Positions 1 through 54,309 of a stretch of DNA of 64,000 nucleotides are shown one piece after another. This stretch comes from Lytechinus pictus (Eukaryota): assembly GCF_037042905.1 (NCBI RefSeq), contig NW_026974146.1, forward strand, positions 620,001 to 684,000, in the 5' to 3' direction. Under the pieces are notes generated by a model. That model worked only from the letters and a program-made list of their open reading frames with translations, had not been told where the DNA came from and made no database searches. Both the position numbers and the translations under genes were made by a program. Position 1 is the stretch's first letter. Each line of letters starts with the position of its first letter.

Positions 1-855
1 ACACATAAGATTTAAAATCAAAACAACATTACAACTATTCATTTTTAATATAAATCTATTCATTATGAGTACTATAAAGCCATTGAGATTTATATTCTAC
101 AGATATATGTCATCAGACACCAACTCACTAAACATAGGTTGAGCAGGACAAAAACATATTTATTGTCTTGCCAACAGATATATGTAAAGTTGGTTGAAAA
201 ACATTAATTTGAAACTGATGTCAAGTTGTGAGGCAGGTATTTATCTTCTACAATATGTGAGTCAGCGAGAAAACAGTATGTTCATATTCATATCCATTTT
301 CCATTCCAGCTTTTACCCTGCATACCATCTCAATCTAAACCACCTGGTCATTGTTCATTTCATCCTATTGTTATGTTCCATGTATACACTCAATGTAGCT
401 CTCATTGTACTGTATACATTGTATGTATCATGGTCAATATCACTCTCATACACATACCACATGTACCTCTGATATTCAATGATCTACTTTCTCTCTCACC
501 TTTTTGAAGCTGATATTTCTCTTTATATCTTCCATGTGTATTATCATAAGAGATGACTAGGAAGAATCACATATGGATAAAGTTAAAAAGGTTTCCATGT
601 TTCAACATCAACCATAACCAAACACATGAAGATATAACAATTTCTCAATTACAACATACCTGTGCATTTGAACCAAATTATATTTTAAAAAAATCTTATC
701 TTGTCTCCTTTCCTTATAAACACTCTCAAACAATCTATCTAACCAGCATAAAATATGTTCTTTAATGTATTTAACACAATTAAGTTCGATAAAAACTTTT
801 TCACTATTCAAAGTTTTCCAAACATTATGTGAGAATAAAGTAAAAGCAGACATAC

Positions 856-1017
856 CTTCAAGGTTGAAGCCTTCTCATTCAGATGAGAATTGAACTCCTG
901 GTCCAAAACTCCTTGTAGCATCAGGTTAGTCAGGTTAGGTAGGGAGCATAAAGCTTCAACTAGGTGATGTGAAGAGGCTGGTGATAGCTTATAACTCTCC
1001 ATCCAAAGAGTATGGAC
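856..1017 (-). CDS. NLR LRR cassette exon A: VHTLWMESYKLSPASSHHLVEALCSLPNLTNLMLQGVLDQEFNSHLNEKASTLK
   Basis: Same splice sites, 162 nt, open; overlaps ORF 808..1002. The gene continues beyond position 1. Confidence 0.9.
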
Positions 1018-1693
1018 CTACATGTGTACAAACATTGATCATTAAACATACATGTACATATCAGATCGTACTATCATGCTGTAATGCTTCAAGTTAAACT
1101 GGTTCAAAAATGTGTTGATAAGGCTTATATTGATACATGTATTTCACAACATATAGCATTGTAGCATCCATACCTGTTTAGGCTTTATAGCTTTTCTGTT
1201 GAGGTGTATTTTGTTAAAGGACTGCATATTTTGAATATCTCTGAATCTTGAAATAAGGAATTGTTACAGGTAATCTCAGTACCCTTATTCTACATTACAG
1301 CATCACTTTCAACAATTTCTGAGATATCATGAAATGATTAATTTAAGACCATACATGTGAAGACCATAATAATCTCATATACTCTGTGATATGTTTGTTA
1401 CTTCATATTTCTATTTTCAGTAACCTTTTACCCTGCATACCATCTCAATCTAAACCACCTGGTCACTGTTCATTTCATCCTATTGTTATGTTTCATGTGG
1501 TCGCATTTCATAAGTTGGGTTTGCAAAAAGGGTGGCGTATGAACAATTTTCCTCACTGTGCCATGGATAAATTGTTGCTACATCACAGCATCTTGACCAA
1601 ATTTATTGAGTAAGATCTCATTTTGAAGCTAGAACTATAGGCCAAATATATTACTATAAATTAGATCAATACAATATCAGTAACCAAAAAATA

Positions 1694-2000
1694 CAGGGCC
1701 GGTATTCTGAAAATTGTGTTAACTTTGGTGTTAAATATCGTGTTATCTCTCTGATTTAACACGCACCTAACATACCCCAAATCGGTATTCTGACAACCGT
1801 GTTATCTCATTTCGTGTTATCTTCAGCTCCTCCCACTCTGCATCTATTCAATCCAATCAAATGCGCTGTTACAGAAACAAATGGCTCAAATATTTTAGGG
1901 AAAGGGGAGTGCGCGCTCGGTGACACGATGCCTGCATAGTGACATCATTTTGTAAGCGCATACAGTACAGCTAAATAAAATGTAGAGCTAGAAAGATACG
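1694..2000. mobile_element. Left end of a Harbinger-like DNA transposon fragment
   Basis: cagGGCCGGTATTCTGA terminus with a subterminal echo (atcggtattctga at ~1781); no matching right end found. Confidence 0.35.
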
Positions 2001-2679
2001 TGGCGAGGGGTGAATGTGACAAATATGGATTATTTAAGACAGCATGGATACAAAATTATGACAGGACACAGAGGCCTTGATCGATTGTGGAGCGGGCAGG
2101 GGACGATCGCCCCTAAAATATGGGGGCAAGCATAATTTATACATGCCCCCAATAATTTTGAGAACTTGGAAAAATAAATATGCAATGCAAATTTTGAAAA
2201 GCATGAAAAGCACTTTAAGACAAATTAAACCTGATATAGAAATATCAAACATACAAAATTTTATTTTTTTCTTTATTAAAATTTTATGCATATAGCGATC
2301 AGCCCCCCCCCCCAAACCCCAATTTTTTCACTTTTGCCCTCCCCCCCCCCCCCACATCCGAAGCATATAAATTGACTGGCGGGATAGATAAATTAAGGAT
2401 AATCTAGAAGCATTGAGAATTTAGAAAATTGTAATCATTGGAATTATATAACGATGGAAAAGGGTAAAAACAAACTGTGAATATATAGAAGAGTTCCCCA
2501 ACAACAAATGGCAAAGAAATACGTAAACTCATTACATCTCACACCGCTCTGTCAAACTTGTAGTCACAGGACTTTGCAATTTTGTAGTCCCAATTCGCTG
2601 ACACTACCGGGTAATCAATGTTCTGCATCTGAAGGTTATTTTTACCTTGAACCACTGTATCCATTTACTGTTTGCAGAT

Positions 2680-3600
2680 TTATGTTTTGAGGTTTGATAT
2701 TTAATGATAATTTTGTATACATACATGTATATACTTACATGTATATCAATATCCGTATATATCAATCCACTGTCCACATCTATCAATATCAATATTTTCG
2801 TACAGGCTGTGTGACCTTGATCCAGTACATTCTTGTACCGGTAACTGTTTGTTTGTACTTTAACATGCCTTTGAGTCACATGTATGATACTTATTGGTAG
2901 TATTACAGTATGTTTACATCTACATCAATATCTACCTGCACATCAACACCAATAACATCTATGTACATCAATAACTGCATCGAGATGTATTTCGATATTT
3001 TAAGCCTGAGGTGTACATACTGAACTTACATATATCTACATCAACATGTACATGTATAACAACAACAACAACTGTACATCAATATCTACATCTATCTATA
3101 TCAATATTTTTGCATCCAGTACATGTACATCTTTCTATTGGTTGTTTGTGCTTTACGCCCTTGATAGCACTGTATTTACATCTGTACATCAATATCTACA
3201 TATATATCAACATCAACATGTTCATCACTAAAGGGTATTTGACCTTGATCAGGTACATCCCTGTATTGTTTGTTTGTTCTTCATTGCATTGTACTTACAT
3301 TTATCTACATCTACATCAATATATCAACACCAATATTTAGGTACGTCACTATCGATATCTTCAATATTTTCTTCTTAAGTTAAAAGGCTGTTCTACAGTG
3401 TACCTTGAATCAGTACATCCTTGTAATGTTTGTTTGTACTGTACATGCCTTTGAGGTGTTATATTTATTGATTGTATGGCATGTTTACATTTATTCACAT
3501 TAACATGTATATCAATACCATCTTTACATCAATATCCACATCTATCTATATCAATATTTTTGCATCCAGCACATATTCTACTGTAGACATGCAAGAATAG
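2680..3600. repeat. Degenerate tandem/low-complexity repeat (catctacatcaatatc-rich)
   Basis: Recurring blocks 'gaccttgatc.gtacat.c.tgta..gtttgtttgt' at ~2813, 3241 and 3402. Confidence 0.6.
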
Positions 3601-3918
3601 TACTGCGTTATTCCAAGCTGTGTGTGTTATTTCCAGAAGATAGGACAGTCTTTTTTATAATTCCTTTTTTTTTTTACTATGTATTTTGCAGATTCTAGTC
3701 TTATATTTGAAAAGACACATTGTTATAATTCCTATTTTTGATGTTATATTCCTTATAATTCTGCATTTCTTTCTTTGTTTGTTTTTTGTTTTATTCAAGA
3801 TTGTTATCTTCAACTGTCGTTGCCCCCCTCTTAGTTAGGTGTTATTCGATATCTTTTTTTTTTTCCTTTTTTTTTTCTTCTTCCTTTCTTTGACTTCTGT
3901 TTACGTACCTACATTTAC

Positions 3919-6900
3919 ATGTCTAGCTGTACATCATGTTGTACTTGTGAAATTATATGTGACCGAAACCATAGTCAAGCCGACTCATATGATTTTATAT
4001 GTTCCATTTGCAATGGAAAACGCTTTCCTTTTAACCATATTTTTGAAGATGATGAGTTTTTATGGGCACAACAGTTTTTTCATATGAATAAGAGCATTCC
4101 ATATGCTAATGTTCAAAATCTTAAAATTAATCCTTTTGTAATGCATAACAACCTCAAAGACGTTCATTATTCTCTCAATCTACATGCACAATCTTCTGTA
4201 GAAGATATCTCAGAGGATGAGACATTTCATTTTCCAACAAATCCATGTTCATATTATCTTCCTGATGATTTTTGTACTAAATAAAATAACTCTGATGATA
4301 GACTATCTCTATTACACTTAAATGCTAGGAGTCTCTGCTCAAATTTTAGTAAACTTGAGGAATTACTGACTTCCCTTGATTTTTCTTTTTCTGTGATAGG
4401 AATATCAGAAACTTGGCTGAATTCTTTCATGTTAACGTCTATTTATAATATATCTAATTACTCATTTGCTCACACTTGTCGTGATTCCAAGACTGGTGGG
4501 GGTGTTGCCTTGTATATTTCTGAAAACGTTGAATTTCTTGAAAGACCAGATCTGACTATAAATAATTTATTTCTTCAAACTGTTTTTATTGAAATTGTCA
4601 ATGTTAACTCTAAGAATATAATTGTTGGGAATGTCTATAGACCTCCCAATACAGAAATTGACTTGTTTTTACATGATATGGATTCTCTGCTTTCTAAAAT
4701 ACACAATGAAAAAAAAAAACTATACTTAATGGGAGATTACAATATCAATTTGTTAAATACTGATAGCCACACTATGACTAAAAGCAAAGAGTTTGCTGAT
4801 ACTATGTTCTCATACAATTTATTCCCAGTAATCACCAAGCCTACACGCATATCATATAAATCTGCTACCATAATAGATAATATTTTTACAAATGCAATCC
4901 AATTTGAATATGATAGTGGGCTACTATATTCTGACATTTCAGATCATTTCCCAATATTTTATGTTGCAAAAAAGTTTAAAAATAATTCAATTTCAAGGGA
5001 ACCCCGCCTGAAGAGAATGATAAATTATGCTGGGATCGATTGCTTAAAAAAGAAATTGAGCTGTCTAGACTGGAAACCAATCTATGCATCCAACGATGTC
5101 AACCATGCCTATGATCTGTTTTACTCAATTTTTTATGATGCCTATAATGAATGTCTTCCTACTGTTAACAGTAAAAAAAATAAAACACGATTCCACAAAC
5201 CTTGGATTTCTTCTGGCATCTTGAAATCTATAAACAAAAAAATATCCTATATAAAATTTTTCAGATACTCTGGACCAGAAAAGATTAAAAAGAAGAAAGA
5301 AGAAAAATACAAAAGCTATAAAAACTGTTTGGTAAAAGTAATTCGGTTTGCAAAAAGAGAATATTATAATAAAAAATTTAACACCTTAAGAGGTAACATG
5401 AAGAAAACATGGCAAGAAATTAATAACATATTGGGGAAAAAAGCTCAAATTTCTCTACCAACCAAAATGTTTTACAATAATGAATCTTTTGATACCAATC
5501 AAATGAAATCTAATTATTTCAACAGATATTTCCCAAATTTGGGCAAAAATCTTGCTCAAGTTATCCCCGACTCCCACACAGAGTTCATGTCTTTTTTAGG
5601 AGACAAAAATATTCATTCAATGTTTTTTAAACCAACCAATATAAATGAAATACTAAAGATCTGCTCCTCCTTGAAATCAATGTTTTCCCGTGGCTCTGAT
5701 GATATTATCCCATCTATTGTAAAAAATGTATTTATCAATGTGTCCATCCACTGTGCCATATATATAATATGTCTCTTGAATATGGTGAAGTTCCTAATGC
5801 ATTTAAAATAGCTAAAATTGTTCCAATTTTCAAAAGGGTGATCGTAAAGACCAATTTCTGTTTTACCCATCTTCTCAAAGATACTAGAAAAAATTGTTTT
5901 TGAACGTTTGTACAGCTTTTTGAATCATAACAATATATTAATCTCACAGCAATTTGGTTTTTGTAAAAGATATTCAACGTACATGCCAATATTTCACATG
6001 TATGATCGTATAATGCAAGAAATAGATAAGGGTAATCTCACCATTGGTATATTTTTGGATCTCTCGAAAGCATTTGACACCGTTGACCATGACATACTTC
6101 TTAAAAAAATGAAACATTATGGGATAAGAGGTCTCGCTCTTGATTGGTTTGATAATTATTTATCAAATCGCATGCAGTATGTTGTGGTCAACGGTGTCAA
6201 GTCAACTTTCAGTCATGTATCACACGGCGTTCCGCAAGGGTCGTTCCTCGGCCCCTTGCTCTTCCTTTTGTATATCAATGACCTTATAAATTGTTCCTCC
6301 ATTCTTAATTTCATACTCTTTGCTGATGATACCAGTATTACTCTTTCTCAAAAAAATATTATTCCTCTCATTAACATCATAAATATTGAACTTCGTAAAG
6401 TCGTTGTCTGGCTTCAATGCAATAAACTTTCACTGAACCTTGAAAAAACTAAATTTGTACTATTTAAAACACAAACTAAAAAAAATTGGTAATGACATTC
6501 CTCCAATTATTACGGCAAGATTATTTCCCAGGTATCAAATATAAATTTGTTAGGTATCAAGATCAATGAATTTCTATCCTGGAAACCTCATATTGATGAA
6601 TTATGCACTCGTTTATCAAAAAGTACTGGGGCCCGTTTCATAAAACTTTTGACTTGCAGCTGTAACATCTCCCATATCTATGGCAAATCTTGTTATTGCA
6701 ATGGCAACTTGTCATAGTTGCAAATATCCGTTTCATAAAACCAATAACAAATTGTTATCGTTAATAACAATAAATAAATGAAAAATGGTTCGTGAACGAG
6801 CCTGATTTGCAGCTAACAGCCGGTTTTTTTCTTCACACACGTCGTCTGCAATAAAATATTGTTGGTGACAGAATTTATGTAAAATTTGAATCGGAGATGT

Positions 6901-9900
6901 AAGTACTTTTCAATTATCCTATTCATTCAATTATTACATCATTTGATATAGTTATAAAACGAATCGCTTCGGAAAGAATGATATTGATAGTAAATGTCAT
7001 ATTTCCATCGTTTTCTACGAGTTAAACTTGCATTTTGCCCGGGGATATCGTGGAGGCATCATCGAGATGCTGAGTGGTCGCTATCCCGGAGCTTCTGCGT
7101 AGTACACGGCAGTGTAGTACCTTGTGTTGGACTGTATTGGGTGGAACTCGGCTGAGCGGCGTTCCGAGTTTCAGCTGTCTTTCTTCTGACTTTCGGACCG
7201 TAGTCTTTAATTACCGAATTAAGTCAGTGTGATATGTGAACAGTTGTGTGAGAGTGTGCCTTAATTTTTTGTGGCTTGGGTTGTTATGGGTGACAAAAAT
7301 ACAGTCGAGTCTTGAGAAGCATTGCATTGGAATAGGTGTCGGCTGTCGCGTCTGTCGATGGGTGTTCACGCTCATGTTCGACCTTGCCTTGGCTTGGGCA
7401 TGTTTTTTCTTGGGGGGGGTGACAAAAACCAATATTCTCTGTAACTGTGAGGGGGGGGGGTGGCTTAATTGCGAGTCTCAAAAGTTTGGTGGCCAGACAT
7501 TTAAAAAAGGCAAAATTGTTTTTTTTTAAGCTGTGCCTGTGAGTGAGCCAAAATTTTTGGCCTTTTTTTTTAGAGGATTTAACTTAGTTCTAGACTCTAC
7601 AAAATCTGATTTTGTGTTAGATTTTGACCAACCCAGGCAACTGCGGCCGGCTGTGCAGTCCGCAGCCAAGGACTCATCCGTGTAATAGTTGGCAGACAAA
7701 TGGGGTAGAATTGTGGTCGCCATAGCTGCACCCAAATTAAAGGGAAAAAATGAATTATGCACTTAACCCGATTATATGGATGAAGATTGTTAAATGATAT
7801 GATGCACATTTATATAATTGACACACACTGTGAATGTACATGTGCATGCACGTATTAATCCGCACCGATACAGACATGATTGAATAAAAATCAAAGAACA
7901 AAAAAAAAATATTGCTCCAACTATCCATGTTTGATAACAAAGACATATATGTTAAGAAATAATTGGTCAACATAATCTGTAGGGGGTATTTTACAGACCG
8001 ATTGATCAACCAATGATAAGAGTTGTATTCTGACATTTAAATCCATGTTCATCTTTGACCGTTGTCAAATAAAAACTTTGCTCTGAGCAAAACATCCTCA
8101 AGGTGGTCTAAAATTCTATTAGATGAAGGTACATGTACTCATCTGTGCGAGTTCATTTACGCTTTGACTGCTATATCTACGAGTTTTATAATCAATATAC
8201 TGGTGTTCTGAAGTTGATTTGTTTATAATCAAATGTTTTTATGTTTATTCTCCTTAAAACATAATAGACGGAGACCAGCTGCGTGGCAGCAGGAGCAAAT
8301 GTTTGTTGTGATGAGGCGTATACCACCATCACCAATGCTGCAATTGCAGTCACCACCACCACTGATGGTCCACCACTTCTGCCACCACCATCAGTTCTGC
8401 GAATGCCACCACCACCACCAAGTCTGCTTCTGCCACCGCCACTACCAAGATCATTCCTGACACAAAGCTTCCAAGTCCTCAACTGACCAGCTATTGCAGC
8501 TGGAGAAGGATAGACCCGCAACTTCAAAGCCAGGGCTTGCTGGTCTCCTACAATAAGAAAAGTGCCTGGGGCCAATCTGATGAACGTGTACTTGTTGCAC
8601 AATATTTGGCCACAGTTGTAGAAATACAGAGACTAACATGCAGCCAAAGGTAAAAATCAATGTCAGATATATATGATTACAAAATGATGGATAGTCTTTG
8701 AAATATGGGTTGCAGAATGAATATCAGTAAAACCCATCATGATGTGCAGTCTGAATTAACCCTAAAAGAGCGGTGGGGGGGGGGGCAGCATTTTTTCGCG
8801 ATAAATCCACAATGTGAAACGTGGTGCCGCGTCATGACTTTTTTTTCAAGTTTCATGAGTTTTCAGACAAATTTGTGACACCGGGGTACCCGGTTGTGAA
8901 ATTATGCAATGTTATGTAAGTACATGTCAGAATTGCTTAAAAATGTGATTTCATGAACAAATCCAATGCAAATTCTATTTCTAGCCAAAATTCATAATTG
9001 TATCATACCGGTTAATATTTATTTTTACTGATTGAAATCAATTAATTTCATGTTGCTTATGATCAGAAAATTTTGTCAACAATATAAAACATTATGAAAG
9101 ATTTCTGCCTAAATGAGACAGAAAATCGTGTACATCTCTTGAACGCACACACAGGTCACGGAGTGACCCTGAGTGCAAACAGCTGACTTTGTTACAACTT
9201 GGGGAGTGATACATTTTTACAATAGGGGTGATCAAACTCACTGGAGGGACTTTAATTCACTTATAACAAAAGAAATGTTAACTACAGTACTCATGTTGAA
9301 TGCTCTGATGAAAATTATATAAGTTTCACATTCATTTGAACGAGAGGACAAGATAATTGTATATATCCAGTGCATTATGCGTGAATCATACTACCATTGC
9401 GATCCCTGCCCGGCCTATGGTTCAGGCATGACGATTCTGAGTGACGTCACCGATAGAGACCTCAAATGCCAGAAGAGCCGATTCGAAAACTAACTTCATC
9501 TAAAAAACACGTATTGAAGATAACATCCAATGGGGAAATGGCTTTCATTTTCGTGAAATATACATTCCATTCTTCAATAAATCTTTCACCCCGTCGTTAA
9601 CTGCCCATTCATTCTCGAGCAATGGGAAAATGAATACAGAGTGTCTCAAAGTTTGTGTGAAAAAAGGTGCATTTTCCATAGAACTTCTGCCAAAAAGCAA
9701 TGCGTAAGGGAAAGATTAGCCCCAAAACACGAATAGATGAGTTAATCAAATGGGATGAATCATGAAAATCAGTGAAATATAGTTTCTCCTGTCCTCATTA
9801 CTCAACGCCCCGACTTGATACGATTAATTTTTCCCCCTCTCCATCAACTTTTAAGAAAAAGGGTGCATATTTTCATAAAAATACCATGTGTTATATCGAC

Positions 9901-12890
9901 GGACGCCCGTGCGTACGAGCAGGAGGAAGCCAAATGTCTCGTATTTTTCATAATGAATCTAAAAAAAACCCAAAATCTACAGATGAAAGGGATTTGATAT
10001 CAATTAATTTTTACATGTCTGAAAAAATGACACTTCAAGGGCTTGTTTATAGATTTCCAGCCAAATTCTGATTTTATGCATGAATTAGTAAAATTTGTTA
10101 ATTAGAAATAAATTTAAATAATTTTAGAACACTCAAATTTACATTTTTTTCATCTGTGACAGGCATGTTGCATTTTGTCACAATTGTGCAATTAACGGTC
10201 AAGATCTTGAGGGCCCCCACCCCCCTTCCGCCCATCTTTCCTGCCTCGAAAATACCCTGACAGTCTTATAAGGGTTGGATTAATTTTACATTAAGCAACC
10301 ATAAAATTCTTACAATGGATTCCAGTGGCATAATGAGCCAAATCTAAATATATGGCTGATGGAACAAAAGTTCTCAAAAGATGCTAGGGAGCGAGCAAAA
10401 TTGTTGAATTTCAATTACAGAAATTGAATTTTTGGAAAGATTATGATGTAATATTCAGAAAATGATATGGAGAGCCAGACAAAGAGCCTAGAAATGTGAT
10501 TTAACCCGTAAGTTAAACTTCTTTATAATTCTGATTCACTTTGGCATAGAAAGTAAGTCACATAATAACAATTTGAATGATTTTTGTCTTCTTGATTTGC
10601 TCTTTGTCAAGAATCCAGTCCAAATTTTAGAATTAAACTCTAAGTTTGAGGTGTTGATGATTTTTTTTTCAGCTGCAAAAATAACAAACCAATATCAATC
10701 ATTGGTAGATTATTAATAATAATAACTTATTGGTGTGACTTGCTTTCTCTTGCCAAATTGGTACATGAATATTCTGCATTTCTATAATTATTGACCCTCA
10801 CCACTACCACCTAAGATGCAACATGTCAAATTACTGTCAATTTCACTTCATCATGTTTTTGATTATTAATTTGTCAGTAAAGGAGTAAAATGACTCAGAA
10901 AGATTACCCGAAGTAGCTCACAGAATTTTTTTACAGGTAGACCCTTTACATTCATTTGATGAATTGAGTTCATGCAAAATCAACTGAATGTAATGAGTAC
11001 AAAATCCTGTTAGTACACCCCACTAGGTGAGGCTATTCTGGTAGATCATCCCAGGGGGTGCCTGAGGATCTTGTCCATTTGGAGAAATCTTGCAAAGTAT
11101 CAAAAGGTGCCTCCACCCCCCCCCCCAGTCTATTAAGGGTTAACAATGAAAGTGGAATTAGGAATAACTTTGGTATCTTGCTTATATGCATTATAAATTA
11201 ATTTCTATTTCAGGCACTTCAATCACATACACAGCAGCAGGAGCAAAAACAGCAGCAACCACACAGATGTAACAACAGCATTGACCAACAGCAACAACAA
11301 CAGCAGCACAAACAATTACTGCAGGAGGTGCAAAAATCACACCGGCAACCTCAACAATATTAAGATGTCCAACAACCACTCCCGGAACGTTAAGAGCAAC
11401 CACAACTTCAGCAAGAGATTCAACAAACACATCAGCAAAAACTTACAGCAGCAGCAACAACAGCACTTATGAGATGAATCTAATTGAAACTCAAAAGCCA
11501 ATGAGGCAACATCTTTTACAAAATGAGACATCATTTATTCATTCTTTCACAGGATAAAGAAAAGCTTTTTTGAAAGTGTAAATTTGCAGGAACACAATGT
11601 ATGTTCCCTATGTATCTATTTATTGAAATAAATTTGACTTTAAAAAGAATGAATGATGATTCATTAATATCTACTTTTTATTTGTCAATGAGTAAAAATA
11701 CATTTATTTTCTACTTAGAATGACAAAAAACAATTTATCAAATCAAAATCATCAAAAATTGACCAATATGGCTCTTAGGCCCTCAAAATTGTTGGTATTT
11801 TTATTAAAAAGCTGTTTCTGTGGCAATATTTGACGCAGCTCAAATAGCAGCGGCACATATTGCCGCAGAAATTGTCACTTGCCGCAGCTCCTTGAGCTGC
11901 GGCAAATATTGCCACTGAAATTGTCATTTGCGGCAGAAAGTATCTGCGGCAAAGTTTTATGAAACGGAAACTTGCCGCTGTTTTGAGATTTGCCGCAGAA
12001 ACACAGATTTGCCGCTGAAAATGGGAGTTGCCGCTGCGGCAAATGTTTTATGAAACGGGCCCCAGGTGTCCTCCGCAAACTGAAGTTTATTTTACCCAGA
12101 CATGTATTAATTTCACTTTATAATAAATACTTTGGTTTTACCCCATCTTACTTATTGCTGTATGCTATGGGGGAATGGATTCAAAACACATTTACATAGA
12201 TTATTTCTTATTCAAAAAAGGTTAATCAGAACAGTTTGTAATGCACATTTCAATAGTCACACAAACAAGTTATTTCTTGATTGTAAAATATTGAAAATTT
12301 GTGACTTGGCTCTTATGTATACTTATATATTTATGTACAATTACCATTCAAATCTCTTGCCAAATATTTTTAATAATCTCTTCAACACAAATGCCTCTTT
12401 CCATTCATACTTTACGCGCCATTCAGCAGATCTTCACCAATATCTTCCAAAAACTAAAATTACCCAAAATTCTCTACGTTGTAGAGGAATTAAGCTGTGG
12501 AATGATTTAAATAATGATATTAAACAAAGCAAAACCCTAAATAAGTTTAAAAAGCTCTTGAAAGTTGAATTTTTTGCTCAGTATAAAAACTCTTGCCAAT
12601 AGCACACTGTAGGTCACTATGATTTATATTATTACTTCTAGTTTGCTTATTTGTTTGTTTATTTCCCCTATGTTAGCCCATTGTTTCTTGTTATTTGTTG
12701 TTCACTCTTTATGTATGCACTATATTAATTTGTATTTGATTGTACCATGGTGGTGCCCCACTCACAAGTTTTTTTTTAATGAAAACTTCTAGGGGCTCCC
12801 AATCCCATGTTTTTACCTAATTTGTATATACCTGTATTTTTATGATTGATTGAAATAAATTTTGAATTGAATTGAAAATTGAATTGAATT
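3919..12890 (+). mobile_element. Degenerate CR1/L2-group (Crack/Daphne-like) LINE, APE+RT, split by the 6629-12062 insertion
   Basis: APE motifs HLNARSL, IGISETWL, GDYN, SDHFP; RT motifs FLDLSKAFD, GVPQGS.LGP, LFADDT. There is an in-frame stop at 4282 and several frameshifts. Removing the insertion restores KSTGVLRKL. C-terminal ORF 12132..12602 is followed by AATAAA and a (GAATT)n tail at ~12854-12890. Confidence 0.9.
6629..12062. mobile_element. 5.4-kb non-autonomous PIF/Harbinger-type DNA transposon
   Basis: TIR GGGCCCGTTTCATAAAAC / GTTTTATGAAACGGGCCC, CWG flanks (CTG left, CAG right), subterminal TIR echoes at ~6728 and ~11953, and many TGCCGC/GCGGCA motifs near the right end. It cleanly interrupts the LINE. 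Confidence 0.85.
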
Positions 12891-13892
12891 GCTAATTCCT
12901 TTACTTTCTGTTTGTGCTTTTTTGGACTTTTTAAATTTTCTTCCTCTCCTTTTGTCTTTTTTATATCATGGCAAAAAGTAACCAAATAAATAACTCAAGA
13001 GCATGATAATAATTTGAATTAATCCAAATTAATAATGCATTTGAAGTGAACATAAAACTGCCTAAACAGATACCTATTCATGAGCATAAATGTGTAATGT
13101 TTCATTTGTGAACTGATGAGCTTAATTTCTTTTTATGTGCATGCATACTGCAACTTAAGATTGAAAGAAATCATGTAACTGGTTAACACTTTACTAACAT
13201 GAATATCAGTATGTAGGACTAGAGTGAAATTTCATGGTATCTTTGGAAGAGTTTTAAAAGGTGAAGAAATAAAATATCATCATTGATTTTAACATATTTT
13301 GTCAATTTTATACTAATAATTAACATACACGAAAATCGAGTTAAAAAATTATTTGTCCGGGGGTCAAACTCAAGGTCAAAGTAAAGGTCAAAGGTCACGA
13401 CCTTATAAATCGCTCCAATACATTATTTGATGCATGTTTTGGATTCCTCTCTGAGTTTCCTAATAAATGGTACCAGTTTCATGAAAATTGGTCAACACGT
13501 TACGACGCAGTGGCCATTGAAAGTTGAAGGTCACGCCCATTTTTGTCAAAACAAGGAGAAAAGGGCGGGCCGTAGTGCGAGAACTGACGGACCGATTGGA
13601 CTAATTTTTTTTGTTTTGTGCATGGGCCATGGTGAATTTTATGTGTACCAATTTACAAAGAATTCCGAGAGGGTCGGGTGCAAAATTGCACATTCACTGG
13701 GTGAATTGGCATGGAATGACCCAAAACATTTACTCATCTAGTCTCCTTTCTTATGCACTCCTAAACAATACATCTAAATAGTATAAAAAAATTATGTTCT
13801 CTAACATATTTAACACTATAAAATCAAATAAACACTTTTCATTATTCCATATTTTCAAACATGTTATGAGTATAAAGTAGAAGCAAGCATAC

Positions 13893-14060
13893 CTTCAAGG
13901 TTGAAGCCTTCTCATTCAGATGAGAATAGAACTCCTCCTCGTCACAAACTCCTCTCAGTGTCAGGTTAGTCAGGTTAGGGAGGGAGCATAAAGCTTCTAC
14001 TAGGTGATGTGAAGAGGCTGATGATAGAGGCTCATCAATCTCAATCTCAAGAGTATGGAC
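13893..14060 (-). CDS. NLR LRR cassette exon B: VHTLEIEIDEPLSSASSHHLVEALCSLPNLTNLTLRGVCDEEEFYSHLNEKASTLK
   Basis: Same splice sites, 168 nt, open (translated by hand). Confidence 0.9.
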
Positions 14061-15007
14061 CTACATGTGTACAAACATTGATTATTAAACATACACGTAC
14101 ATATCAGATGGTATGATCACACTGAAATGCTTCAAGTTAAACTGGTTCAAAAATGTGTTGATAAGGCTAATGTTTGCATCACAACATAACATTTTGGCAT
14201 CCATACCTGTTTAGGCTTCACAGCTTTTCTGTTGATGTGTATTTTGTTTACAAAAGACATTTAATACCTATGAATTTTTAAAGAAGGAATTATTACAGGT
14301 AATCTATGTACCCTTATTCAACATTATAGCATCACTTTCAACAATTTCTAAGATATCACAAATATTATCAATTTAAGATCCTACATGTGAAGACCATAAT
14401 AATCTGATAAACTCTGTGATATGTTTGTTTCTTCATATTTGTATTCTATTTTCAGTAACCTTTTACCCTGCATACCATCTCAATCTAAACCACCTGGTCA
14501 TTGTTCATTTCATTCTATTATTATGTTCCATGTATACACTCAATGTAGCTCTCACTGTACTGTATACATTGTATGTATCATGGTCAATATCACTCTCATA
14601 CACATACCACATGCACCTCTGATATTCAATGATCTACTTTCTCTCCCACATTTTTGAAGCTGATATTTCTCTTTATATCTTCCATGTGTATTATCATATT
14701 AGAGATGACTAGGAAGAATCACATATGGATAAAGTTAAAAAGGTTTCCATGTTTCAACATCAACCATAACCAAACACATGAAGATATAACAATTTCTCAA
14801 TTACAACATACCTGTGCATTTGAACCAAATTATATTTTAAAAAAATCTTATCTTGTCTCCTTTCCTTATAAACACTCTCAAACAATCTATCTAACCAGCA
14901 TAAAATATGTTCTTTAATGTATTTAACACAATTAAGTTCGATAAAAACTTTTTCACTATTCAAAGTTTTCCAAACATTATGTGAGAATAAAGTAAAAGCA
15001 GACATAC

Positions 15008-15172
15008 CTTCAAGGTTGAAGCCTTCTCATTCAGATGAGAATTGAACTCCTGGTCCAAAACTCCTTGTAGCATCAGGTTAGTCAGGTTAGGTAGGGAGCA
15101 TAAAGCTTCAACTAGGTGATGTGAAGAGGCTGATGATAGAGGCTTTTCAATCTCAATCTTAAGAGTATGGAC
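15008..15172 (-). CDS. NLR LRR cassette exon C: VHTLKIEIEKPLSSASSHHLVEALCSLPNLTNLMLQGVLDQEFNSHLNEKASTLK
   Basis: Same splice sites, 165 nt, open (translated by hand). Confidence 0.9.
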
Positions 15173-16258
15173 CTACATGTGTACAAACATTGATCATTAA
15201 ACATACATGTACATATCAGATGGTACTATCATGTTGTAATGCTTCAAGTTAAACTGGTTCAAAAATGTGTTGATAAGGCTAATGTTTGCATCACAACATA
15301 ACATTTTAGCAACCATACCTGTTTAGGCTTCACAGCTTTTCTGTTGCTGTGTATTTTGTTTATAAAAGACATTTTAATACCTGTGATTTTTTAAGAAGGA
15401 ATTATTACAGGTAATCTCTGTACCCTTATTCTACATAACAGCATCACTTTCAACAATTTCTAAGATATCACAAAAATTATCAATTTTAGATCATACATGT
15501 GAAGACCATAATAATCTGAGAAACTCTATATCTTTGTTACTCCATATTTGTATTTCATTTTCAGTAACCTTTTACCCTGCATTAGCATACCATCTCAATC
15601 TAAACCACCTGGTCATTGTTCATTTCATCCTATTGTTATGTTTCATGTATACACTCAATGTAGCTCTCACTGTACTGTATACATTGTATGTATCATGGTC
15701 AATATCACTCTCATACACATACCACATGCACCTCTGATATTTAATGATCTACTTTCTCTCCCACCTTTTTGAAGCTGATATTTAGGTGATCTGTCAATCG
15801 ACAGATCAACTCTTGATTTCGTATGAATTTTCTTTTTTATTTATTATTAGGTGATCTGTCAATCGACAGATCAACTCTCAATTTCGTACGAATTTTCTTT
15901 ATTATTTATTTCTTAATTTTTATTTTTCCACCCTTTCCTTGTTAGCGTAAAATCTCAAAATCTACATCATCAATTTTCTTCAAAATATTATCAGTTATGG
16001 GGACTTATCATGTCATCTGTATGAAACAAGTTCAAGGTAAAAGGTCATCATGACGTCATCTAGACGCCATTTTGTAAATTCACATTATCAATCATATTTT
16101 CATTATCAATTATCAGAAATTAACCATATTTACATCACATTAACTTCAGGTCAAGGGTCAACTGTACATGTCATCAAAGGTCATGTAAAGGTCACGACGT
16201 GCGCGTACGCGCGAGTCAAATTTTTTGACCAAAGTAGAGTATGAAACAGGCCATTTAA

Positions 16259-17739
16259 AAGGGGAATCCAACCGAAATAAAACCTTGTTTTTATAAGAAA
16301 AAGAAAAATCAGACAAATTGATAGGTGAAAGTTTGAACAATATTGGAAAAATAACAAGAAAGTTATGAATTTATTAAAGTTGTAAATATTGGTAATCACT
16401 TTACACATGGAGACTTCAAATTAGCCGCTTATGTGATGTCATAGTGATGTAAGGCAAGGACTACTCTTCCATGTACTCCAATACATATTATGGCTAAAAT
16501 GTCATTTTCCCCCAAAGTTTTATTTCAAATCATATTTTTCTTTCATGAGGACATTAAACAATATACTACCTGGGTTATATTAGGGCCGTCTGCACCATCC
16601 CGAGTTTTCAAATTAGCGCGCTATTTCTGATCCGGCAAATTATCCCGATCTGAAAAATCTCGAGATAGTTGGCGGTGCAGACGCAATTATCGCGCTAGTT
16701 CGTAGGATTAATCTCGAGATTGCAATCCCAAGTCAACTCGGGTTCATTTGCAAAATAGCGCGCTATTTTACGAATTATCCCGCTAATTCGTCGGTGCAGA
16801 CGCACTCGAGATTGGACTCGGGGTAATTTATTCATGACGTCAGTCCATAATGCAATTCGCGTTCCACTTCCGCCTTGGTCAAAACATAAACACGTGCGAA
16901 AGTCAACTTTATACATGCGAATAGTGTTCATAAGCAACGATGGTGTCCCACCAGTGAATGGATTTTGGGAGAGACCAGACCAAAGGGGGAGGCGCTCATC
17001 GACGATGGTCATATTCAATAACAACACTGACAGCAGTGTTGTCTTATTCCTTCGCAAAATGTGAGCAAATAGCATTTCTTTCCTCCTCTCCCTCTCTCTC
17101 TCTCTCTGTCGTTGCCTCCTACTCCGCCATCATATTTAACGAAGAATACATCACTTCTTCACTCGCTGAGCTGAGAGGATTGTTGCATAACACCGGTTGA
17201 ATTCGGCGAAAGTGCTAGTGAAAGGAGTACATTGCTTGCATATCGCGGGAAGTTATTCAAAAGTGCGGGCCGTTGAAACTCCAAGATCCGAAAGTGCGCA
17301 TGCTCGTAATATCGGGCTTGTTGCCTCGCTCGAGCAGGAATCGCTCTTCTTGCGATGGTGCAGACGGGGTTTCTTGAATCTCGAGATTAATCGCGAAGTG
17401 GGCCGATCGGGCTAAAATCTCGAGATTGAGCAAACTCGGGATGGTGCAGCACCGCCTATTTATATTTAGATTACTGCCCCAGGGGAATGGGTACTTAGGA
17501 GAAAACCACAAATCCCTGATAATAAAGTACATGGCCTATGGGAAAGTTGTCCTTGCCCCTTGTCATAATTTACTTACCCAGTTGCCAATTTGAAATCTAC
17601 ATGGTATCAGTGATCTCAATTTTAAAGCAGTTACAACTTTCTTATTGCTTGTCCGATTTCTTTCAAACTTTCACCATTCTGTTTAATTCATTTTTCTCCT
17701 TCCCAACACAACATTCTATGGCCAAGGCTAGATTCCCCT
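16259..17739. mobile_element. Kolobok-like non-autonomous element (TTAA TSD)
   Basis: TTAA|(A)AGGGGAATC ... GATTCCCCT|TTAA; the empty site is visible in the paralogous HINE at ~32464. Confidence 0.75.
16582..17457. mobile_element. Harbinger-like MITE nested in the Kolobok-like element
   Basis: TIR ...TGCACCATCCCGAGTTT / AAACTCGGGATGGTGCA..., GC-rich interior. Confidence 0.65.
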
Positions 17740-19334
17740 TTAAGCATTTCAAAAAATTTGCGCGCACCCACGGTTACGCGCGCGTTCTCGCGCGTAACGG
17801 CACTATACAACATAGGATCGCCATTTTTTTTCATATCAATGCACCGATGATATAATTTTGAACATTTTGATACCTTGATCAACCTTCTACGACAAGTAAT
17901 AACGGAATGAGCCCCAATGAAAGTTTACAGCATGCGCGCGCGCACTAACCATAGACAATATATGTGCAAAAACATGCCTATACAAAATTCATTATAGCTC
18001 TTCAGGAAGTCCGTTGACCCCCCAATTTTTTTCATATTCAAATAGAGTATGAATGGGAGATATGATTTCATGTCATATTTGACCCAAAATTTTATCATGA
18101 CATCATCAAAATGGCGTCGGAACTCAAAATTCCCATTTTGCTACTTATGACGTCATCACAATTATGCAAATTTGACTCTAACTCCGTAAATATTGGTCAA
18201 TTTTCTCCCAGTTTTTTATATGTTGTAGCTGAAGAAATACTCTTTCAAATTTTAAGGCTATATTAACATTTAAACGAACAGATCATCCTGAAAATTGGCA
18301 AGTTATAGAGGCATGTCATTTTCGCTCATTTTGTGTGCAATCTCTATGGGAAATGACTTTTTCTCAAAACTGGATTTTACATTCCTCTATTTCGCGAGCC
18401 ATATCTCCATTTCAATTTGTCGGTTTTCTCTGAGCTTGAAGTATGTTGTAGCTGAGATTGTAAGATATCGGAAGTGTGGTCTCCATTTTCCGATCAGATG
18501 CCGGGATCATGCCCGTATTTCACTTGCCAAATTGGAATTGAGGTCCTCTTGTTTGCTTACGTGTGAGTCTATGGAAAGTGTTTAGCTCATTGGGTAAGGC
18601 ATGAGACTTGCTTACTTAAGGGCGAGGGTTCGAGCCCAGTGGGCAGGGGTGAAAATGATAATTTTTTTTTTTTTTTCTTTTCAACATTTCACAAATGGTC
18701 CTTTATGACCATTACAATGTATATAAAATAAAACATTGGACAATAAAAGAGATTTTAAAGTCCCATTTAATGTACAATGTTCCTGTACAATATGTGTATG
18801 ACCTACACTTTTTTACACAACTTTTTCATTTCCCTCTTTTCAAGAGTATTCAACATGTTCTTTTCATAAGACAAGTTCAGTTTTCATCATGATGATCATA
18901 TTGATCTCAATAAACATGCTGATTGTCTCCATGATCATGAAATCAGAGACAGATCACCTAATTCGTTCTCATGATGAATTAAAATTCTAGTTCTCTTTAT
19001 ATCTTCCATGTGAATTATCATATTAGAGATGACTAGGAAGAATCACATATGGATAAAGTTAAAAAGGATTTCATGTTTCTACATCAATCATAACCAAACA
19101 CTTGAAGATATGACAAATTTGTCAATTACAGCATACATGTACTTGTGCATTAGAACCAAATTTGAAAAAGAAATCTCATCTAGTCTCCTTTATTTATAAA
19201 CGCTCTCAAACAATATTTCTAAGTAGCATAAAATATGTTCTTTAATGTATTTAACACAATAAAATTAGATAAACACTTTTCAATATTCCAAGTTTTCCAA
19301 ACATGATGTGAGAATAAAGTAAAGGCAGACATAC

Positions 19335-19499
19335 CTTCAAGGTTGAAGCCTTCTTATTCAGATGAAAATAGAACTCCTTGTGATAAACTCCATGTAGTGT
19401 CAGGTTAGTCAGGTTAGGTAGGAAGCATAAAGCTTCTACTAGGTGATGTGAAGAGGCTGATGATAGAGGCTTATAACTATCAATCTCAAGAGTATGGAC
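19335..19499 (-). CDS. NLR LRR cassette exon D: VHTLEIDSYKPLSSASSHHLVEALCFLPNLTNLTLHGVYHKEFYFHLNKKASTLK
   Basis: Same splice sites as exon E, 165 nt, open (translated by hand; not in the ORF track). Confidence 0.9.
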
Positions 19500-20425
19500 C
19501 TACATGTGTACAAACATTGATCATTAAACATACATGTACATATCAGATGGTATGATCATGCTGTAATGCTTCAAGTTAAACTGGTTCAAAAATGTGTTGA
19601 TAATTAGGCTAATGTTTGCATCACAACATAACATTTTAGCATCCATACCTGATTAGGCTTTACAGCTTTCTGTTGATGTGTATTTTGTTTACAAAAGACA
19701 TTTAATACCTATGAATTCTGAAAGAAGAATACAGGTAATCTTTGTACCCTTATACTACCTTACAGCATCACTTTCAACAATTTCTGAGATATCACACAAA
19801 TGATCAATTTAAGATGATACATGTGAAGACCACAATAATCCCAGATATGTTTGTTACTCCACATTGTTTTCTATTTTCAGTAACCTTTTACCCTGCATAC
19901 CATCTCAATCTAAACCACCTGGTCATTGTTCATTTCATTCTATTGTTATGTTCCATGTATACACTCAATGTAGCTCTCACTGTACTGTATACCGGTACAT
20001 TGTATGTATCATGGTCAATATCACTCTCATACACATACCACATGCACCTCTGATATTCAATGATCTACTTTCTCTCCCACCTTTTGGAAGCTGATATTTC
20101 TCTTTATATCTTTGATGTGTATTATCATAAGAGATGACTAGGAAGAATCATATATGGATAAAGTTAAAAAGGTTTCCATATTTCAACATCAACCATGATT
20201 ACCAAACACTTGAAGATATGACAATTTCTCAATTACAGCATACCTGTGCATTAGAGCCAAATTTCCAAAACATTTACTCATCTAGTCTCCTTTATTAATG
20301 AACACCCCTAAATATAGTATAAAAATATGTTCTTTAATGTATTTAACACAATAAAATTAGATAATTTTTTTCCATTATTTCATGTTTTCAAACATGTTAT
20401 ACGTATAAAGTAGAAGCAAGCATAC

Positions 20426-20590
20426 CTTCAATGCTGAAGCCTTCTTATTCAGATGAGAATAGAACTCCTTGTCCCAAACTCCACTCAGTGTCAGGTTAGT
20501 CAGGTTAGGTAGGGAGCATAAAGCGTCTACTAGGTGATGTGAAGAGGCTGATGATAGAAACTTATCATTCATAAGCTGAAAGGTGTGGAC
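20426..20590 (-). CDS. NLR LRR cassette exon E: VHTFQLMNDKFLSSASSHHLVDALCSLPNLTNLTLSGVWDKEFYSHLNKKASALK
   Basis: TAG|GTC acceptor, AAG|GTATG donor, 165 nt, open, LxxLxL motif (LPNLTNLTL). Confidence 0.9.
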
Positions 20591-21409
20591 CTACATATAT
20601 TGATCATTAAACATACATATCAGATGGTATGATCATGCAGTATAACTGGTTCATAGATATTATAAATATTTATTTATATAGCATAATTTTATTATACAGC
20701 TTGTCTGTTTAGGTGCAAGTATTTTGTTAAATCTAATACCTGTAAATATTAAAAGAATGTAATATTACAGGTTATTTCAAAATCAATAATCTCAGTTATG
20801 GAGTGTTGGCTATCATGATGTTGTAAATTGGATTTTCCTTGTGTAATGTTTCTCTAAAAGAAAACCTAGTTAAAAGAATACTATGTTTTATTTCATTTCA
20901 GCACATGTAGCATTTGAATATAATGTATAAAATATTTCAGATTATAACTGCAAACTTTATCTTTAGTACTCTTTCTCCCTCTCTGTACTTCAACCAACTT
21001 TGACTTACTCTTTCCCTCTCTGCTCATTGGCTAATTCTTTCCCGCCTTTTTAGGAGTAGCAGTAATGCAAATTCCTGTACCCCCTATAGGGATGCTTTTG
21101 TACTGTGATGTGCACCGTTGCACTTTTATTGCTAGCTAGGGAGAGAGTCCAGTGACTCATGACACTGGCAGTAGCAAGGGCATTCCCACTGTTTGTTGTT
21201 GAGGAGGAGACTTGTCCCTACAGAAGATTAATTTTGAAGTATAGAAGAATTCTGCAAGGACTTCTCTCCATTTACTTTAGATGTCGCAGCAAAGCGGAAT
21301 TAGTGTCTGACCGAGGCTGTTTTCCTTTGGTCAATAAAAGAACCCACTGAAACCTCAGCCCTTGTGAGTCGTGTCCGTGTTGTGTGGTCGTCGGCGTGAA
21401 CCCTTTCAA

Positions 21410-21427
21410 TGGTGTCAGAAGTGGGAT
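21410..21427 (+). promoter_or_regulatory. Primer binding site, tRNA-Leu type
   Basis: TGGTGTCAGAAGTGGGAT, 1 nt after the LTR, is complementary to a tRNA-Leu 3' end (...AUCCCACUUCUGACACCA). Confidence 0.85.
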
Positions 21428-21703
21428 CATCAGCAACAAGGGACCATCTGGTACGGGCTCTGCAGATATTGGACTTAGAAGAAATCTTGAGAACTTACGT
21501 GTATGTGGTCTTATCCTGGTGTCATCGTGCATAACGTAAAATTGGAATGACTTTAGACTGGTTCTAAACAGCCTCGGTCAGACTGTATGTAAATAATGGA
21601 CAACATATGCTCTCTTTTTTACTGATTTGTGCAGTGATTGTATTGTGGTTTCGCTATTCTGTATGCAAAGTTCTTTTTATGTGCCAAATTCAAATCTAGG
21701 ATC

Positions 21704-34630: not shown

Positions 34631-34666
<36 letters not shown>

Positions 34667-35193: not shown

Positions 35194-35229
35194 CTCATAC
35201 TTCAACACGTGCCTGTTTTAATAGCTAAT

Positions 35230-43143: not shown

Positions 43144-43179
<36 letters not shown>

Positions 43180-54141: not shown

Positions 54142-54309
54142 TCTGGCTGTCCTTCCTCCTCTGGCAAGAGTTTCATAGAAGGTAGGGTGAAAGCTTGCCT
54201 GCAGTTCAACATCCCTTAGTGATGGTGCTGAGCATATCATCACTGCCACCTCTTTTGATATTCCTGGTCCGTAGGAAGGTACATGTAGATGTCCAACATA
54301 CATATAGAT
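54142..54309 (-). CDS. NLR LRR-region exon 1 (IYMYVGHL...ICSAPSLRDVEL...ARGGRTAR, 56 aa)
   Basis: Acceptor ctacttccAG|ATC, donor AGA|GTAAGT, 168 nt, phase 0-0, open. It continues in frame from the NACHT exon and aligns loosely with the downstream cassette exons (CSxPxLxxL/V, FY). Confidence 0.85.

What the first reader, a model, noticed from the sequence alone, without database searches (positions are those of the whole stretch)
856..20590. Mosaic LRR exon-cassette array: constant core with two re-assorted hypervariable patches
Seen: five open exons share a nearly invariant core (LS.ASSHHLV.ALC.LPNLTNL) and tail (EF..HLN.KAS.LK). Patch 1 varies as WMESYK- / EIEIDEP / KIEIEKP / EIDSYKP / QLMNDKF, and patch 2 as MLQGVLDQ / TLRGVCDEE / MLQGVLDQ / TLHGVYHK / TLSGVWDK. 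Indels are whole codons, and by eye the patches are more divergent than the adjacent intron DNA. The patches assort independently: A = D-like patch 1 (SYK) + C patch 2; B = C-like patch 1 + E-like patch 2 and E-type downstream intron. Known: residues in and just after LxxLxL form the ligand-facing surface of LRRs, and NLR families are expanded in sea urchins. Inference: recombination through the conserved core shuffles half-exons under diversifying selection, giving a germline repertoire generator inside one NLR gene, loosely analogous to VLR cassette use. This is my best candidate for a new system here; I cannot verify novelty.
Basis: partly seen in the sequence, partly recalled or inferred. 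Interest (0 to 1): 0.82.

Follow-up and report, generated by a model that had tools for sequence, protein, structure and literature searches.

The report
Hypervariable LRR exon cassettes, urchin NLR
Five near-identical exons at the tail of a sea-urchin (Lytechinus pictus) NLR immune-receptor gene differ almost only at predicted ligand-facing residues and are recombination mosaics, a pattern shared by the whole paralog family and already known from fungal NLRs, and this particular copy shows no sign of using the exons.

Summary
Five minus-strand exons of 162-168 bp have AG/GT splice sites and lengths divisible by three. Each sits in a ~1.1-kb exon+intron tandem unit that transposon insertions have broken up. 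They follow a NACHT exon and a first LRR exon of L. pictus LOC135158051, a Death-NACHT-LRR gene.

In the window the two patches differ by 26-31% at the nucleotide level, the exon core by 3%, and the introns by 5-18%. Across 21 cassettes from five genes and two species, patch dN/dS is about 3. In unit pairs whose flanks differ by under 3%, patches differ by 18%.

Max-chi-square tests place breakpoints for A and B between the patches and for D inside patch 1. An AlphaFold model of a paralog puts both patches on a beta-strand and the loop after it, in an NLRP/ribonuclease-inhibitor-like horseshoe.

Exchange is family-wide, and each hypervariable codon assorts almost on its own. The cassettes are ordinary in-line exons. 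No VLR-like use is indicated. All three RefSeq isoforms of this gene stop before the cassettes, and three RNA runs give essentially no depth on the three cassettes covered (C, D, E).

This is the "high internal conservation" NLR repeat pattern known from fungi. A 2025 paper says it was reported for a sea-urchin LRR NLR in 2006.

The parts
58602..60404 (-). Large exon encoding the NACHT NTPase and winged-helix region of LOC135158051. The 3' end is approximate.
   Evidence: Pfam NACHT 8.3e-23 and NOD2_WH 7e-5. 100% identity to P0001. The protein tail maps to 58652-58602.
54142..54309 (-). First, diverged LRR exon (168 bp). All annotated isoforms end just after it.
   Evidence: tblastn 100% to the P0001 tail. 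The donor GTAAGT is read through in isoform X1.
20426..20590 (-). Cassette E, the first of the array (165 bp, 55 aa, two LRRs).
   Evidence: Its upstream intron is homologous to the other units only over about 90 nt.
19335..19499 (-). Cassette D (165 bp).
   Evidence: A breakpoint lies inside patch 1.
15008..15172 (-). Cassette C (165 bp).
13893..14060 (-). Cassette B (168 bp). Mosaic of a C-like 5' part and an E-like patch 2.
   Evidence: Max-chi2 breakpoint at exon nt 32-63, p=0.002.
856..1017 (-). Cassette A, the last of the array (162 bp). It matches C from the core onward (1 difference in 320 nt) but has a different patch 1 and upstream intron.
   Evidence: Max-chi2 breakpoint at exon nt 27-63, p=0.0002. 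Window 1-855 aligns over its full length to the last intron of paralogs.
1..1498 (-). Repeat block holding unit A and its introns.
   Evidence: Self-blastn and alignment.
13701..15781 (-). Repeat block holding units B and C, with a period of about 1.1 kb.
18991..20680 (-). Repeat block holding units D and E.
15782..18990 (.). 3.2-kb insertion in the D-C intron, absent from a contig of another run.
   Evidence: The X15 contig joins 15781 to 18991. RNA depth here comes from a repeat.
1499..13700 (.). 12.2-kb composite insertion in the B-A intron. It includes a non-LTR retrotransposon at 4393-6492 (+).
   Evidence: Pfam Exo_endo_phos_2 and RVT_1. Repeat-block limits.
20801..27910 (+). Gypsy-type LTR retrotransposon in the 33.5-kb intron between the first LRR exon and cassette E.
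Evidence: gag, protease, RT and RNase H ORFs at 21638-25689.

Best explanation
The five exons are the complete cassette array, E first and A last, of the LRR tail of a Death-NACHT-LRR gene, L. pictus LOC135158051. This gene lies in a cluster of close paralogs.

Each cassette encodes two LRRs of an NLRP/ribonuclease-inhibitor-like horseshoe. Its length is a multiple of three and the junctions read in phase 0, so cassettes can be gained, lost or skipped without breaking the frame.

The evolving module is the whole ~1.1-kb exon+intron unit. Unequal crossing-over changes the copy number, which runs from 1 to 7 per protein model. Gene conversion within and between paralogs keeps the framework, and much of the intron, nearly identical.

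About ten codons resist this homogenisation and diversify under positive selection. They are positions 5 and 7-10 of the first LRR and 34, 36 and 39-42 of the second. They lie on the beta-strand and ascending loop of the concave face. Residues recur there from a limited alphabet and are re-assorted by recombination.

Shown here: the anatomy, the rates, the mosaicism, the breakpoints, and the fold of a paralog. Inferred: that selection comes from ligand or pathogen recognition, and that the long perfectly identical core is a favoured place for exchange to resolve.

This particular copy looks partly disabled. Its introns are swollen by transposons, and its known transcripts end before the cassettes.
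For: Gene context:
- The NACHT exon and first LRR exon lie on the same strand, and the gene identity is known.
- Paralog proteins carry 1-7 of the same cassettes and then a shared terminal exon.
- Predicted isoforms of paralogs differ by whole cassettes: P0009, P0008 and P0007 have 6, 5 and 3, and P0003 and P0002 have 3 and 2.
- Paralog loci show the same ~1.1-kb period with AG/GT at all 21 cassettes.
- A's downstream intron matches the last intron of paralogs over its full length.

Rates:
- Patches give dN 0.34 and dS 0.11. The framework gives dN 0.043 and dS 0.030. Flanking introns give K 0.10-0.18.
- A tree-free count finds 52 nonsynonymous and 4 synonymous states in the patches, p=0.011.
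- In the 7 pairs whose flanks are at most 3% apart, flanks differ by 0.018, the framework by 0.019 and the patches by 0.177.

Concerted evolution:
- Upstream introns are 0-1/147 different between paralogs, and even between species.

Recombination:
- Max-chi2 breakpoints for A (p=0.0002) and B (p=0.002) fall between the patches, and for D (p=0.0006) inside patch 1.
- The PHI test gives p=0.001 for the 17 L. pictus cassettes.
- Upstream and downstream introns are uncorrelated, Mantel r=0.00.

Structure:
- The AF2 model has pLDDT 90.9. Strands cover cassette positions 3-7 and 32-36.
- The best Foldseek matches are NLRP7, NLRP9, NLRP3 and ribonuclease inhibitor.

Breadth:
- The same patches are hypervariable in S. 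purpuratus cassettes.
Against: - No transcript evidence joins these five cassettes to the gene. The RefSeq isoforms stop before them. C, D and E have essentially no RNA depth in three runs. The tissue of those runs is unknown, only about 6% of each was read, and B and A were not covered.
- The dN/dS test is modest (p=0.011), rests on 16 codons, and uses pairwise or state counts rather than a recombination-aware codon model.
- Patch 2 alone is not significant (p=0.19).
- The core has no informative sites, so the A and B breakpoints can only be placed somewhere between nt 27 and 63.
- The PHI test is not significant when the L. variegatus cassettes are added (p=0.54).
- The structure is that of a paralog, not of the window's own cassettes.
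- No ligand is known.
Confidence: 0.8

Rival explanations
1. The array is a dedicated repertoire generator inside one gene, with cassettes used VLR-like. That would mean templated or somatic assembly, or regulated combinatorial choice, rather than ordinary family evolution.
For: Breakpoints for A and B fall between the two patches. The exons have lengths divisible by three, and whole-cassette isoform differences occur in paralogs. L. variegatus locus L004 holds four intact cassettes but its model uses two. Framework third positions are less diverse than introns, pi 0.033 against 0.084-0.155, which could mean constraint on the DNA itself.
Against: The cassettes are in-line exons with canonical AG/GT sites, not flanking donor cassettes. 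Exchange partners are mostly in other paralogs. No spliced or rearranged reads were seen, and depth on the cassettes covered is essentially zero. This gene's transcripts stop upstream. Low synonymous diversity is also expected from exon-centred conversion or from splicing enhancers in skipped exons.
Confidence: 0.07
2. The window's array is a decaying remnant. Transposon insertions stranded the cassettes, and the patch differences are relaxed-constraint noise.
For: The introns measure 33.5 kb, 12.2 kb and 3.2 kb because of insertions. Annotated isoforms exclude the cassettes. There is no RNA depth. A has a codon deletion and an S-to-P change in the otherwise invariant LSSASS.
Against: All five frames and all ten splice sites are intact. 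Differences are concentrated about tenfold in the same codons that vary in expressed paralogs, while the framework is conserved. Decay would hit all sites and would bring frameshifts. Stranding may still be true as a recent event, on top of the family-wide process.
Confidence: 0.1
3. A mutational hot spot explains the patches, with no role for selection. Candidates are targeted deamination or error-prone repair at the patches.
For: The patches differ by up to 20/45 nt between units whose flanks differ by 2%. Short-range four-gamete failures are three times the intron level.
Against: The excess is in nonsynonymous changes, 52 against 4. Patch third positions are less diverse than first and second positions (0.18 against 0.27). 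By eye, the codon states involve all kinds of base change rather than a deaminase-like spectrum. Within the patches, the structural residues I6, L35 and V38 stay conserved.
Confidence: 0.03

Closest known systems
[quoted passage not shown]
   Same: The NOD receptor's sensor domain is built of near-identical repeats kept alike by concerted evolution within and between paralogs. A few codons per repeat are hypervariable, under diversifying selection, and sit on the predicted binding surface. Repeat number varies and repeats are shuffled.
   Different: There the repeats are WD40, ANK or TPR and contiguous in coding sequence; Dyrka et al. found no LRR motifs in fungal NLRs. Here each module is two LRRs in its own exon, and a ~950-bp intron belongs to the homogenised unit, so exon skipping is an added source of variation. 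Allelic variation and function (allorecognition) are shown in fungi and not here.
Sea-urchin NLR expansion (about 203 genes in S. purpuratus; PMC7308585 citing Rast et al. and Hibino et al. 2006)
   Same: Same family. The S. purpuratus relatives listed carry NACHT, and some also Death. PMC12222747 states that Hibino et al. [quoted passage not shown]
   Different: I could not read Hibino 2006. I therefore cannot say whether the per-codon hypervariability, the exon+intron module or the mosaic breakpoints were described there.
Plant R-gene clusters with sequence exchange and hypervariable solvent-exposed xxLxLxx residues, such as Cf-4/9 (from my own knowledge, not checked here)
   Same: Tandem paralogs, unequal crossing-over and gene conversion, and positive selection on beta-strand residues of the LRRs.
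   Different: Plant NLR LRRs are mostly in one or a few exons and are irregular. They are not near-identical cassettes. NB-ARC replaces NACHT, and the origin is independent.
Vertebrate NLRP genes and the zebrafish NLR-B30.2 family (PMC4852459)
   Same: NACHT in one large exon, and an RI-like horseshoe. That vertebrate LRR pairs sit in separate in-frame exons is from my own knowledge. The zebrafish family is shaped by gene conversion.
   Different: In zebrafish the LRRs are "not particularly variable", and positive selection sits in the B30.2 domain (PMC4852459). Here the LRR concave face is the variable part.
Lamprey VLR assembly (from my own knowledge)
   Same: LRR modules with a constant framework and variable concave-face residues.
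   Different: VLR cassettes are non-exonic donors copied somatically into an incomplete gene. These are spliceable exons in line, and no somatic event is indicated.

Membership tests
Animal NLR (NACHT-LRR receptor) | Central NACHT NTPase domain | tested here: met
   Pfam NACHT 8.3e-23 (81.5 bits against a cut-off of 26.7) on window 58521-60404, minus strand.
Animal NLR (NACHT-LRR receptor) | C-terminal leucine-rich repeats | tested here: met
   Met by fold. The AF2 model of the paralog tail has pLDDT 90.9 with alternating strand and helix. Top PDB matches are NLRP7, NLRP9, NLRP3 and ribonuclease inhibitor. By sequence, the Pfam LRR models do not reach threshold, and only SNaCT14 (PF22720) hits.
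Animal NLR (NACHT-LRR receptor) | N-terminal effector (Death) domain | tested here: met
   The exons lie outside the window (no tblastn hit). Protein P0001 of this gene carries precomputed PF00531. Paralog P0006 scores Death 1.4e-10.
Animal NLR (NACHT-LRR receptor) | The five cassettes are part of this gene's mRNA | tested here: not met
   RefSeq isoforms X1-X3 end after exon 54142-54309. Three RNA runs show essentially no depth and no E-D or D-C joints. This is weak negative evidence: the tissue is unknown, about 6% of each run was read, and B and A were not covered.
HIC-type NLR repeat domain (fungal paradigm) | Repeats about 85% identical or more over at least 100 aa (criterion in PMC4986451) | tested here: inconclusive
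   Borderline. The window cassettes are 73-91% identical to C, with a mean column identity of 85% over 5 x 55 aa. Outside the patches, identity is near 96%.
HIC-type NLR repeat domain (fungal paradigm) | A few hypervariable codons under diversifying selection on the binding surface | tested here: met
   Patch omega is about 3, with a state count of 52 against 4, p=0.011. The positions lie on the strand and ascending loop.
HIC-type NLR repeat domain (fungal paradigm) | Concerted evolution within and between paralogs | tested here: met
   Introns are 0-2% different between paralogs and species, and nearest neighbours change from segment to segment.
HIC-type NLR repeat domain (fungal paradigm) | Repeat-number polymorphism between alleles | not testable with these tools
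   Only differences between paralogs (1-7 cassettes) and one insertion polymorphism were seen. No second haplotype of the array was available.
VLR-type somatic cassette assembly | Donor cassettes outside an incomplete germline gene, without splice sites, copied in somatically | tested here: not met
   The cassettes lie in line, each with AG...GTATG. The same cassettes are spliced as exons in paralog models. Somatic DNA could not be compared.

The most novel reading that the evidence does not exclude
Cassette arrays of the cluster, including untranscribed ones such as this, may act as a shared donor pool. Very short-tract templated conversion would rewrite single hypervariable codons in expressed paralogs. 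This could happen in the germline and perhaps somatically in gut or immune cells. It would be an animal NLR counterpart of chicken pseudo-V conversion or of fungal HIC repeat instability, with exon skipping adding combinatorial isoforms.
Probability: 0.08. Interest if true: 0.85.

Novelty: new member of a known kind. Interest (0 to 1): 0.45.

Why it matters
Animal NLRs are usually described as sensors of invariant patterns with conserved LRRs. In the large zebrafish family the LRRs are not variable and selection acts on another domain (PMC4852459).

Here an echinoid Death-NACHT-LRR family shows the plant-like and fungal-like signature of specific recognition. The framework is near-identical, and the concave-face residues evolve about ten times faster than the neighbouring introns. 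They are re-assorted by recombination among modules that can also be skipped in splicing.

That makes a concrete prediction: direct, diversified ligand binding by sea-urchin NLRs. It also names about ten residues per cassette to test.

For this particular locus the finding is more modest. It is one transposon-laden member of the family, probably not fully expressed.

Tried and rejected
- A whole-unit MAFFT alignment misplaced E because the tandem units overlap. I replaced it with alignments anchored on the exon.
- Paralog DNA could not be fetched for P0025, P0018, P0022 and P0021, because only the longest product of a gene is on record.
- Hibino 2006 and Rast 2006 are not held.
- Pfam does not call these repeats LRR, so membership rests on the fold.
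- Assembly artefact was rejected. The units differ in their introns and insertions, and independent contigs agree.
- The idea that the core is the only boundary of exchange was rejected. Patch 2 is unlinked from its downstream intron, and patch 1 and patch 2 are weakly correlated, r=0.37.
- I did not use the search of protein representatives or the atlas.
- The hammerhead ribozyme noted at 57607-57974 by another reader was not examined.


Full report
**What is there**

tblastn and a profile HMM find exactly five copies of the motif, all on the minus strand, at E 1e-37 to 1e-39. Nothing else in the window scores below E 0.09. The exon limits are:
- A 856-1017
- B 13893-14060
- C 15008-15172
- D 19335-19499
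- E 20426-20590

Each exon is preceded by AG and followed by GTATG. The lengths are 162, 168, 165, 165 and 165 bp, so every indel is a whole codon and every exon length is divisible by three.

**Context**

The exons sit in a ~1.1-kb exon+intron tandem unit. The unit is present in three blocks: 1-1498, 13701-15781 and 18991-20680. Insertions separate the blocks.
- A 12.2-kb composite insertion includes a non-LTR retrotransposon.
- A 3.2-kb insertion is missing from a contig of another sequencing run, which joins 15781 to 18991.

Upstream on the same strand are a 627-aa open exon with a NACHT domain (Pfam 8.3e-23) and a first, diverged LRR exon at 54142-54309. Between that exon and cassette E lie 33.5 kb, at least 7.1 kb of it a Gypsy element and the rest rich in other retrotransposon ORFs. 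In paralogs this intron is about 4 kb.

The NACHT exon is 100% identical to Lytechinus pictus LOC135158051, a Death-NACHT protein on a 1.4-Mb contig that carries many close paralogs.

Window 1-855 aligns over its full length only to the last intron of paralogs, so A is the last cassette. E's upstream intron is of a different type, so E is the first. The array of five is therefore complete. The shared terminal exon (GSFPQ...) lies beyond the window start.

**Family**

Paralog and ortholog proteins carry 1-7 cassettes of the same type, followed by that terminal exon. Predicted isoforms differ by whole cassettes: 6, 5 and 3 in LOC135158025, and 3 and 2 in LOC129283407.

I fetched three L. pictus paralog loci and one L. 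variegatus locus. They show the same ~1.1-kb period and AG/GT at every cassette. The L. variegatus locus holds four intact cassettes, but its model uses two.

**Rates**

Within the window the mean pairwise nucleotide difference is as follows:
- patch 1: 0.31
- patch 2: 0.26
- core: 0.033
- tail: 0.057
- introns: 0.05-0.18

The results:
- patches: dN 0.34, dS 0.11, ratio 3.1
- framework: dN 0.043, dS 0.030
- 150-190 nt of flanking intron: K 0.10-0.18

A count of distinct codon and residue states needs no tree. It gives 52 nonsynonymous and 4 synonymous states in the patches (p=0.011), and 20 against 5 in the framework. Patch 2 alone is not significant.

The clearest figure comes from the seven pairs of units whose two flanks both differ by at most 3%. 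In these, flanks differ by 1.8%, the framework by 1.9% and the patches by 17.7%. In one pair the patches differ at 20 of 45 nt.

The same two patches are the high-entropy positions in 41 distinct Lytechinus cassettes and in 28 from S. purpuratus.

**Mosaicism**

- A matches C from the core to +190 nt of the downstream intron, with 1 difference in 320 nt, and that one lies in the core. A differs from C at 6/18 nt in patch 1 and by 12% in the upstream intron.
- Maximum chi-square tests place the breakpoint at exon nt 27-63 for A (p=0.0002) and at nt 32-63 for B (p=0.002).
- For D the breakpoint falls at nt 18-23, inside patch 1 (p=0.0006; all three).

The picture is nevertheless wider than two shuffled half-exons.
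- The nearest relative of each segment is often a cassette of another paralog, or of the other species. Upstream introns differ by 0-1 in 147 nt between these.
- Upstream and downstream introns are uncorrelated, and patch 2 is not linked to its own downstream intron.
- All 21 patch-1 haplotypes are unique.
- Within 20 nt, 42% of site pairs in the patches fail the four-gamete test, against 13% in introns.

So single codons assort almost independently. This points to recurrent use of a limited set of residues under selection, or to very short conversion tracts, on top of ordinary exchange.

The core has no informative sites, so the A and B breakpoints cannot be placed more finely. It is an inference that this longest perfectly identical tract favours resolution there.

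**Structure**

An AlphaFold model was built from an alignment of 18 family tails, predicting the tail of paralog P0006. It has mean pLDDT 90.9 and a regular strand-helix horseshoe. Strands fall on cassette positions 3-7 and 32-36.

Hypervariable positions 5, 7, 34 and 36 are therefore the outward-facing strand residues. Positions 8-10 and 37-42 form the loop after the strand. That outward-facing strand residues line the concave face is established LRR knowledge, not a measurement here.

The best solved matches are NLRP7, NLRP9, NLRP3 and ribonuclease inhibitor. Pfam's LRR models miss the repeats, and only SNaCT14 hits.

**Expression**

All three RefSeq isoforms of this gene (852-857 aa) end right after the first LRR exon, by read-through or by tiny alternative last exons.

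I laid three rRNA-depleted RNA runs of the same species label on 14900-20700. They give essentially no depth on C, D and E and no splice joints. Only a repeat inside the 3.2-kb insertion is covered. B and A lie outside that stretch.

The tissue is unknown and about 6% of each run was read, so this is weak negative evidence. Taken with the swollen introns, it suggests that this copy no longer uses its cassettes, even though all frames and splice sites remain intact.

**Comparison and verdict**

Near-identical repeats kept alike by concerted evolution, with a few hypervariable binding-surface codons under diversifying selection and with repeat shuffling, is the "high internal conservation" pattern. 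It is described for fungal NLRs (PMC12222747, PMC4986451). PMC12222747 adds that an LRR NLR with HIC was reported in a sea-urchin genome by Hibino et al. 2006, which I could not read.

The zebrafish NLR family differs: its LRRs are not variable (PMC4852459).

What is particular here is that the homogenised module includes an intron, and that each module is a skippable in-frame exon. Nothing supports VLR-like or somatic use.

I rate this a well-documented new member of a known kind. It is of moderate interest for comparative immunology, and of lesser interest for this particular, probably stranded, locus.

Noticed in passing
window 16574-17460, inside insert 15782-18990: In all three RNA runs many reads join 16574 to 17460, skipping 885 nt with a 7-nt overlap (about 60-130 reads per run). 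This looks like a nested insertion that is absent from the transcribed copies of this repeat elsewhere in the genome. It does not look like a canonical intron (ends TT..AT).
   Followed up: no
window 15782-18990: A contig of run X15 joins 15781 directly to 18991. The 3.2-kb insertion in the D-C intron is therefore absent from another haplotype or individual.
   Followed up: partly
window about 34047-43246: This is a second Ty3/Gypsy-type element in the large intron. The same 228-aa ORF and the same 33-bp tandem array occur at 34047-34733 and 42560-43246, which is likely the LTR pair. They flank a gag ORF (35209-36345) and an open 1402-aa pol ORF (36453-40661) with protease, RT, RNase H and integrase.
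   Followed up: partly
L004:16663-22897 (L. variegatus LOC121416789): The genome holds four intact cassettes with AG/GT sites, but the longest RefSeq product (P0017) uses only two. This is either exon skipping or an incomplete model.
   Followed up: no
cassette exons of window and L001-L004: Third codon positions of the framework are less diverse (pi 0.033) than the flanking introns (0.084 and 0.155). Among recently related units, however, framework and flanks differ equally. This could reflect exon-centred conversion, splicing-enhancer constraint, or constraint on the DNA itself.
   Followed up: partly
P0009:600-1004; window cassettes: Pfam LRR models do not detect these repeats. The only family above its cut-off is PF22720 (SNaCT14, short NACHT-associated C-terminal domain), although the fold is a clear RI-like LRR horseshoe.
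   Followed up: partly
window 57607-57974: Another first-stage note reports a sense-oriented hammerhead ribozyme in the intron between the NACHT and LRR exons. I did not examine it.
   Followed up: no
window 54142 donor: The three annotated isoforms end by read-through of the donor after the first LRR exon (VSRNSS*) or by splicing to very short last exons (QGH*, K*). This fits premature termination within the transposon-filled intron.
   Followed up: partly
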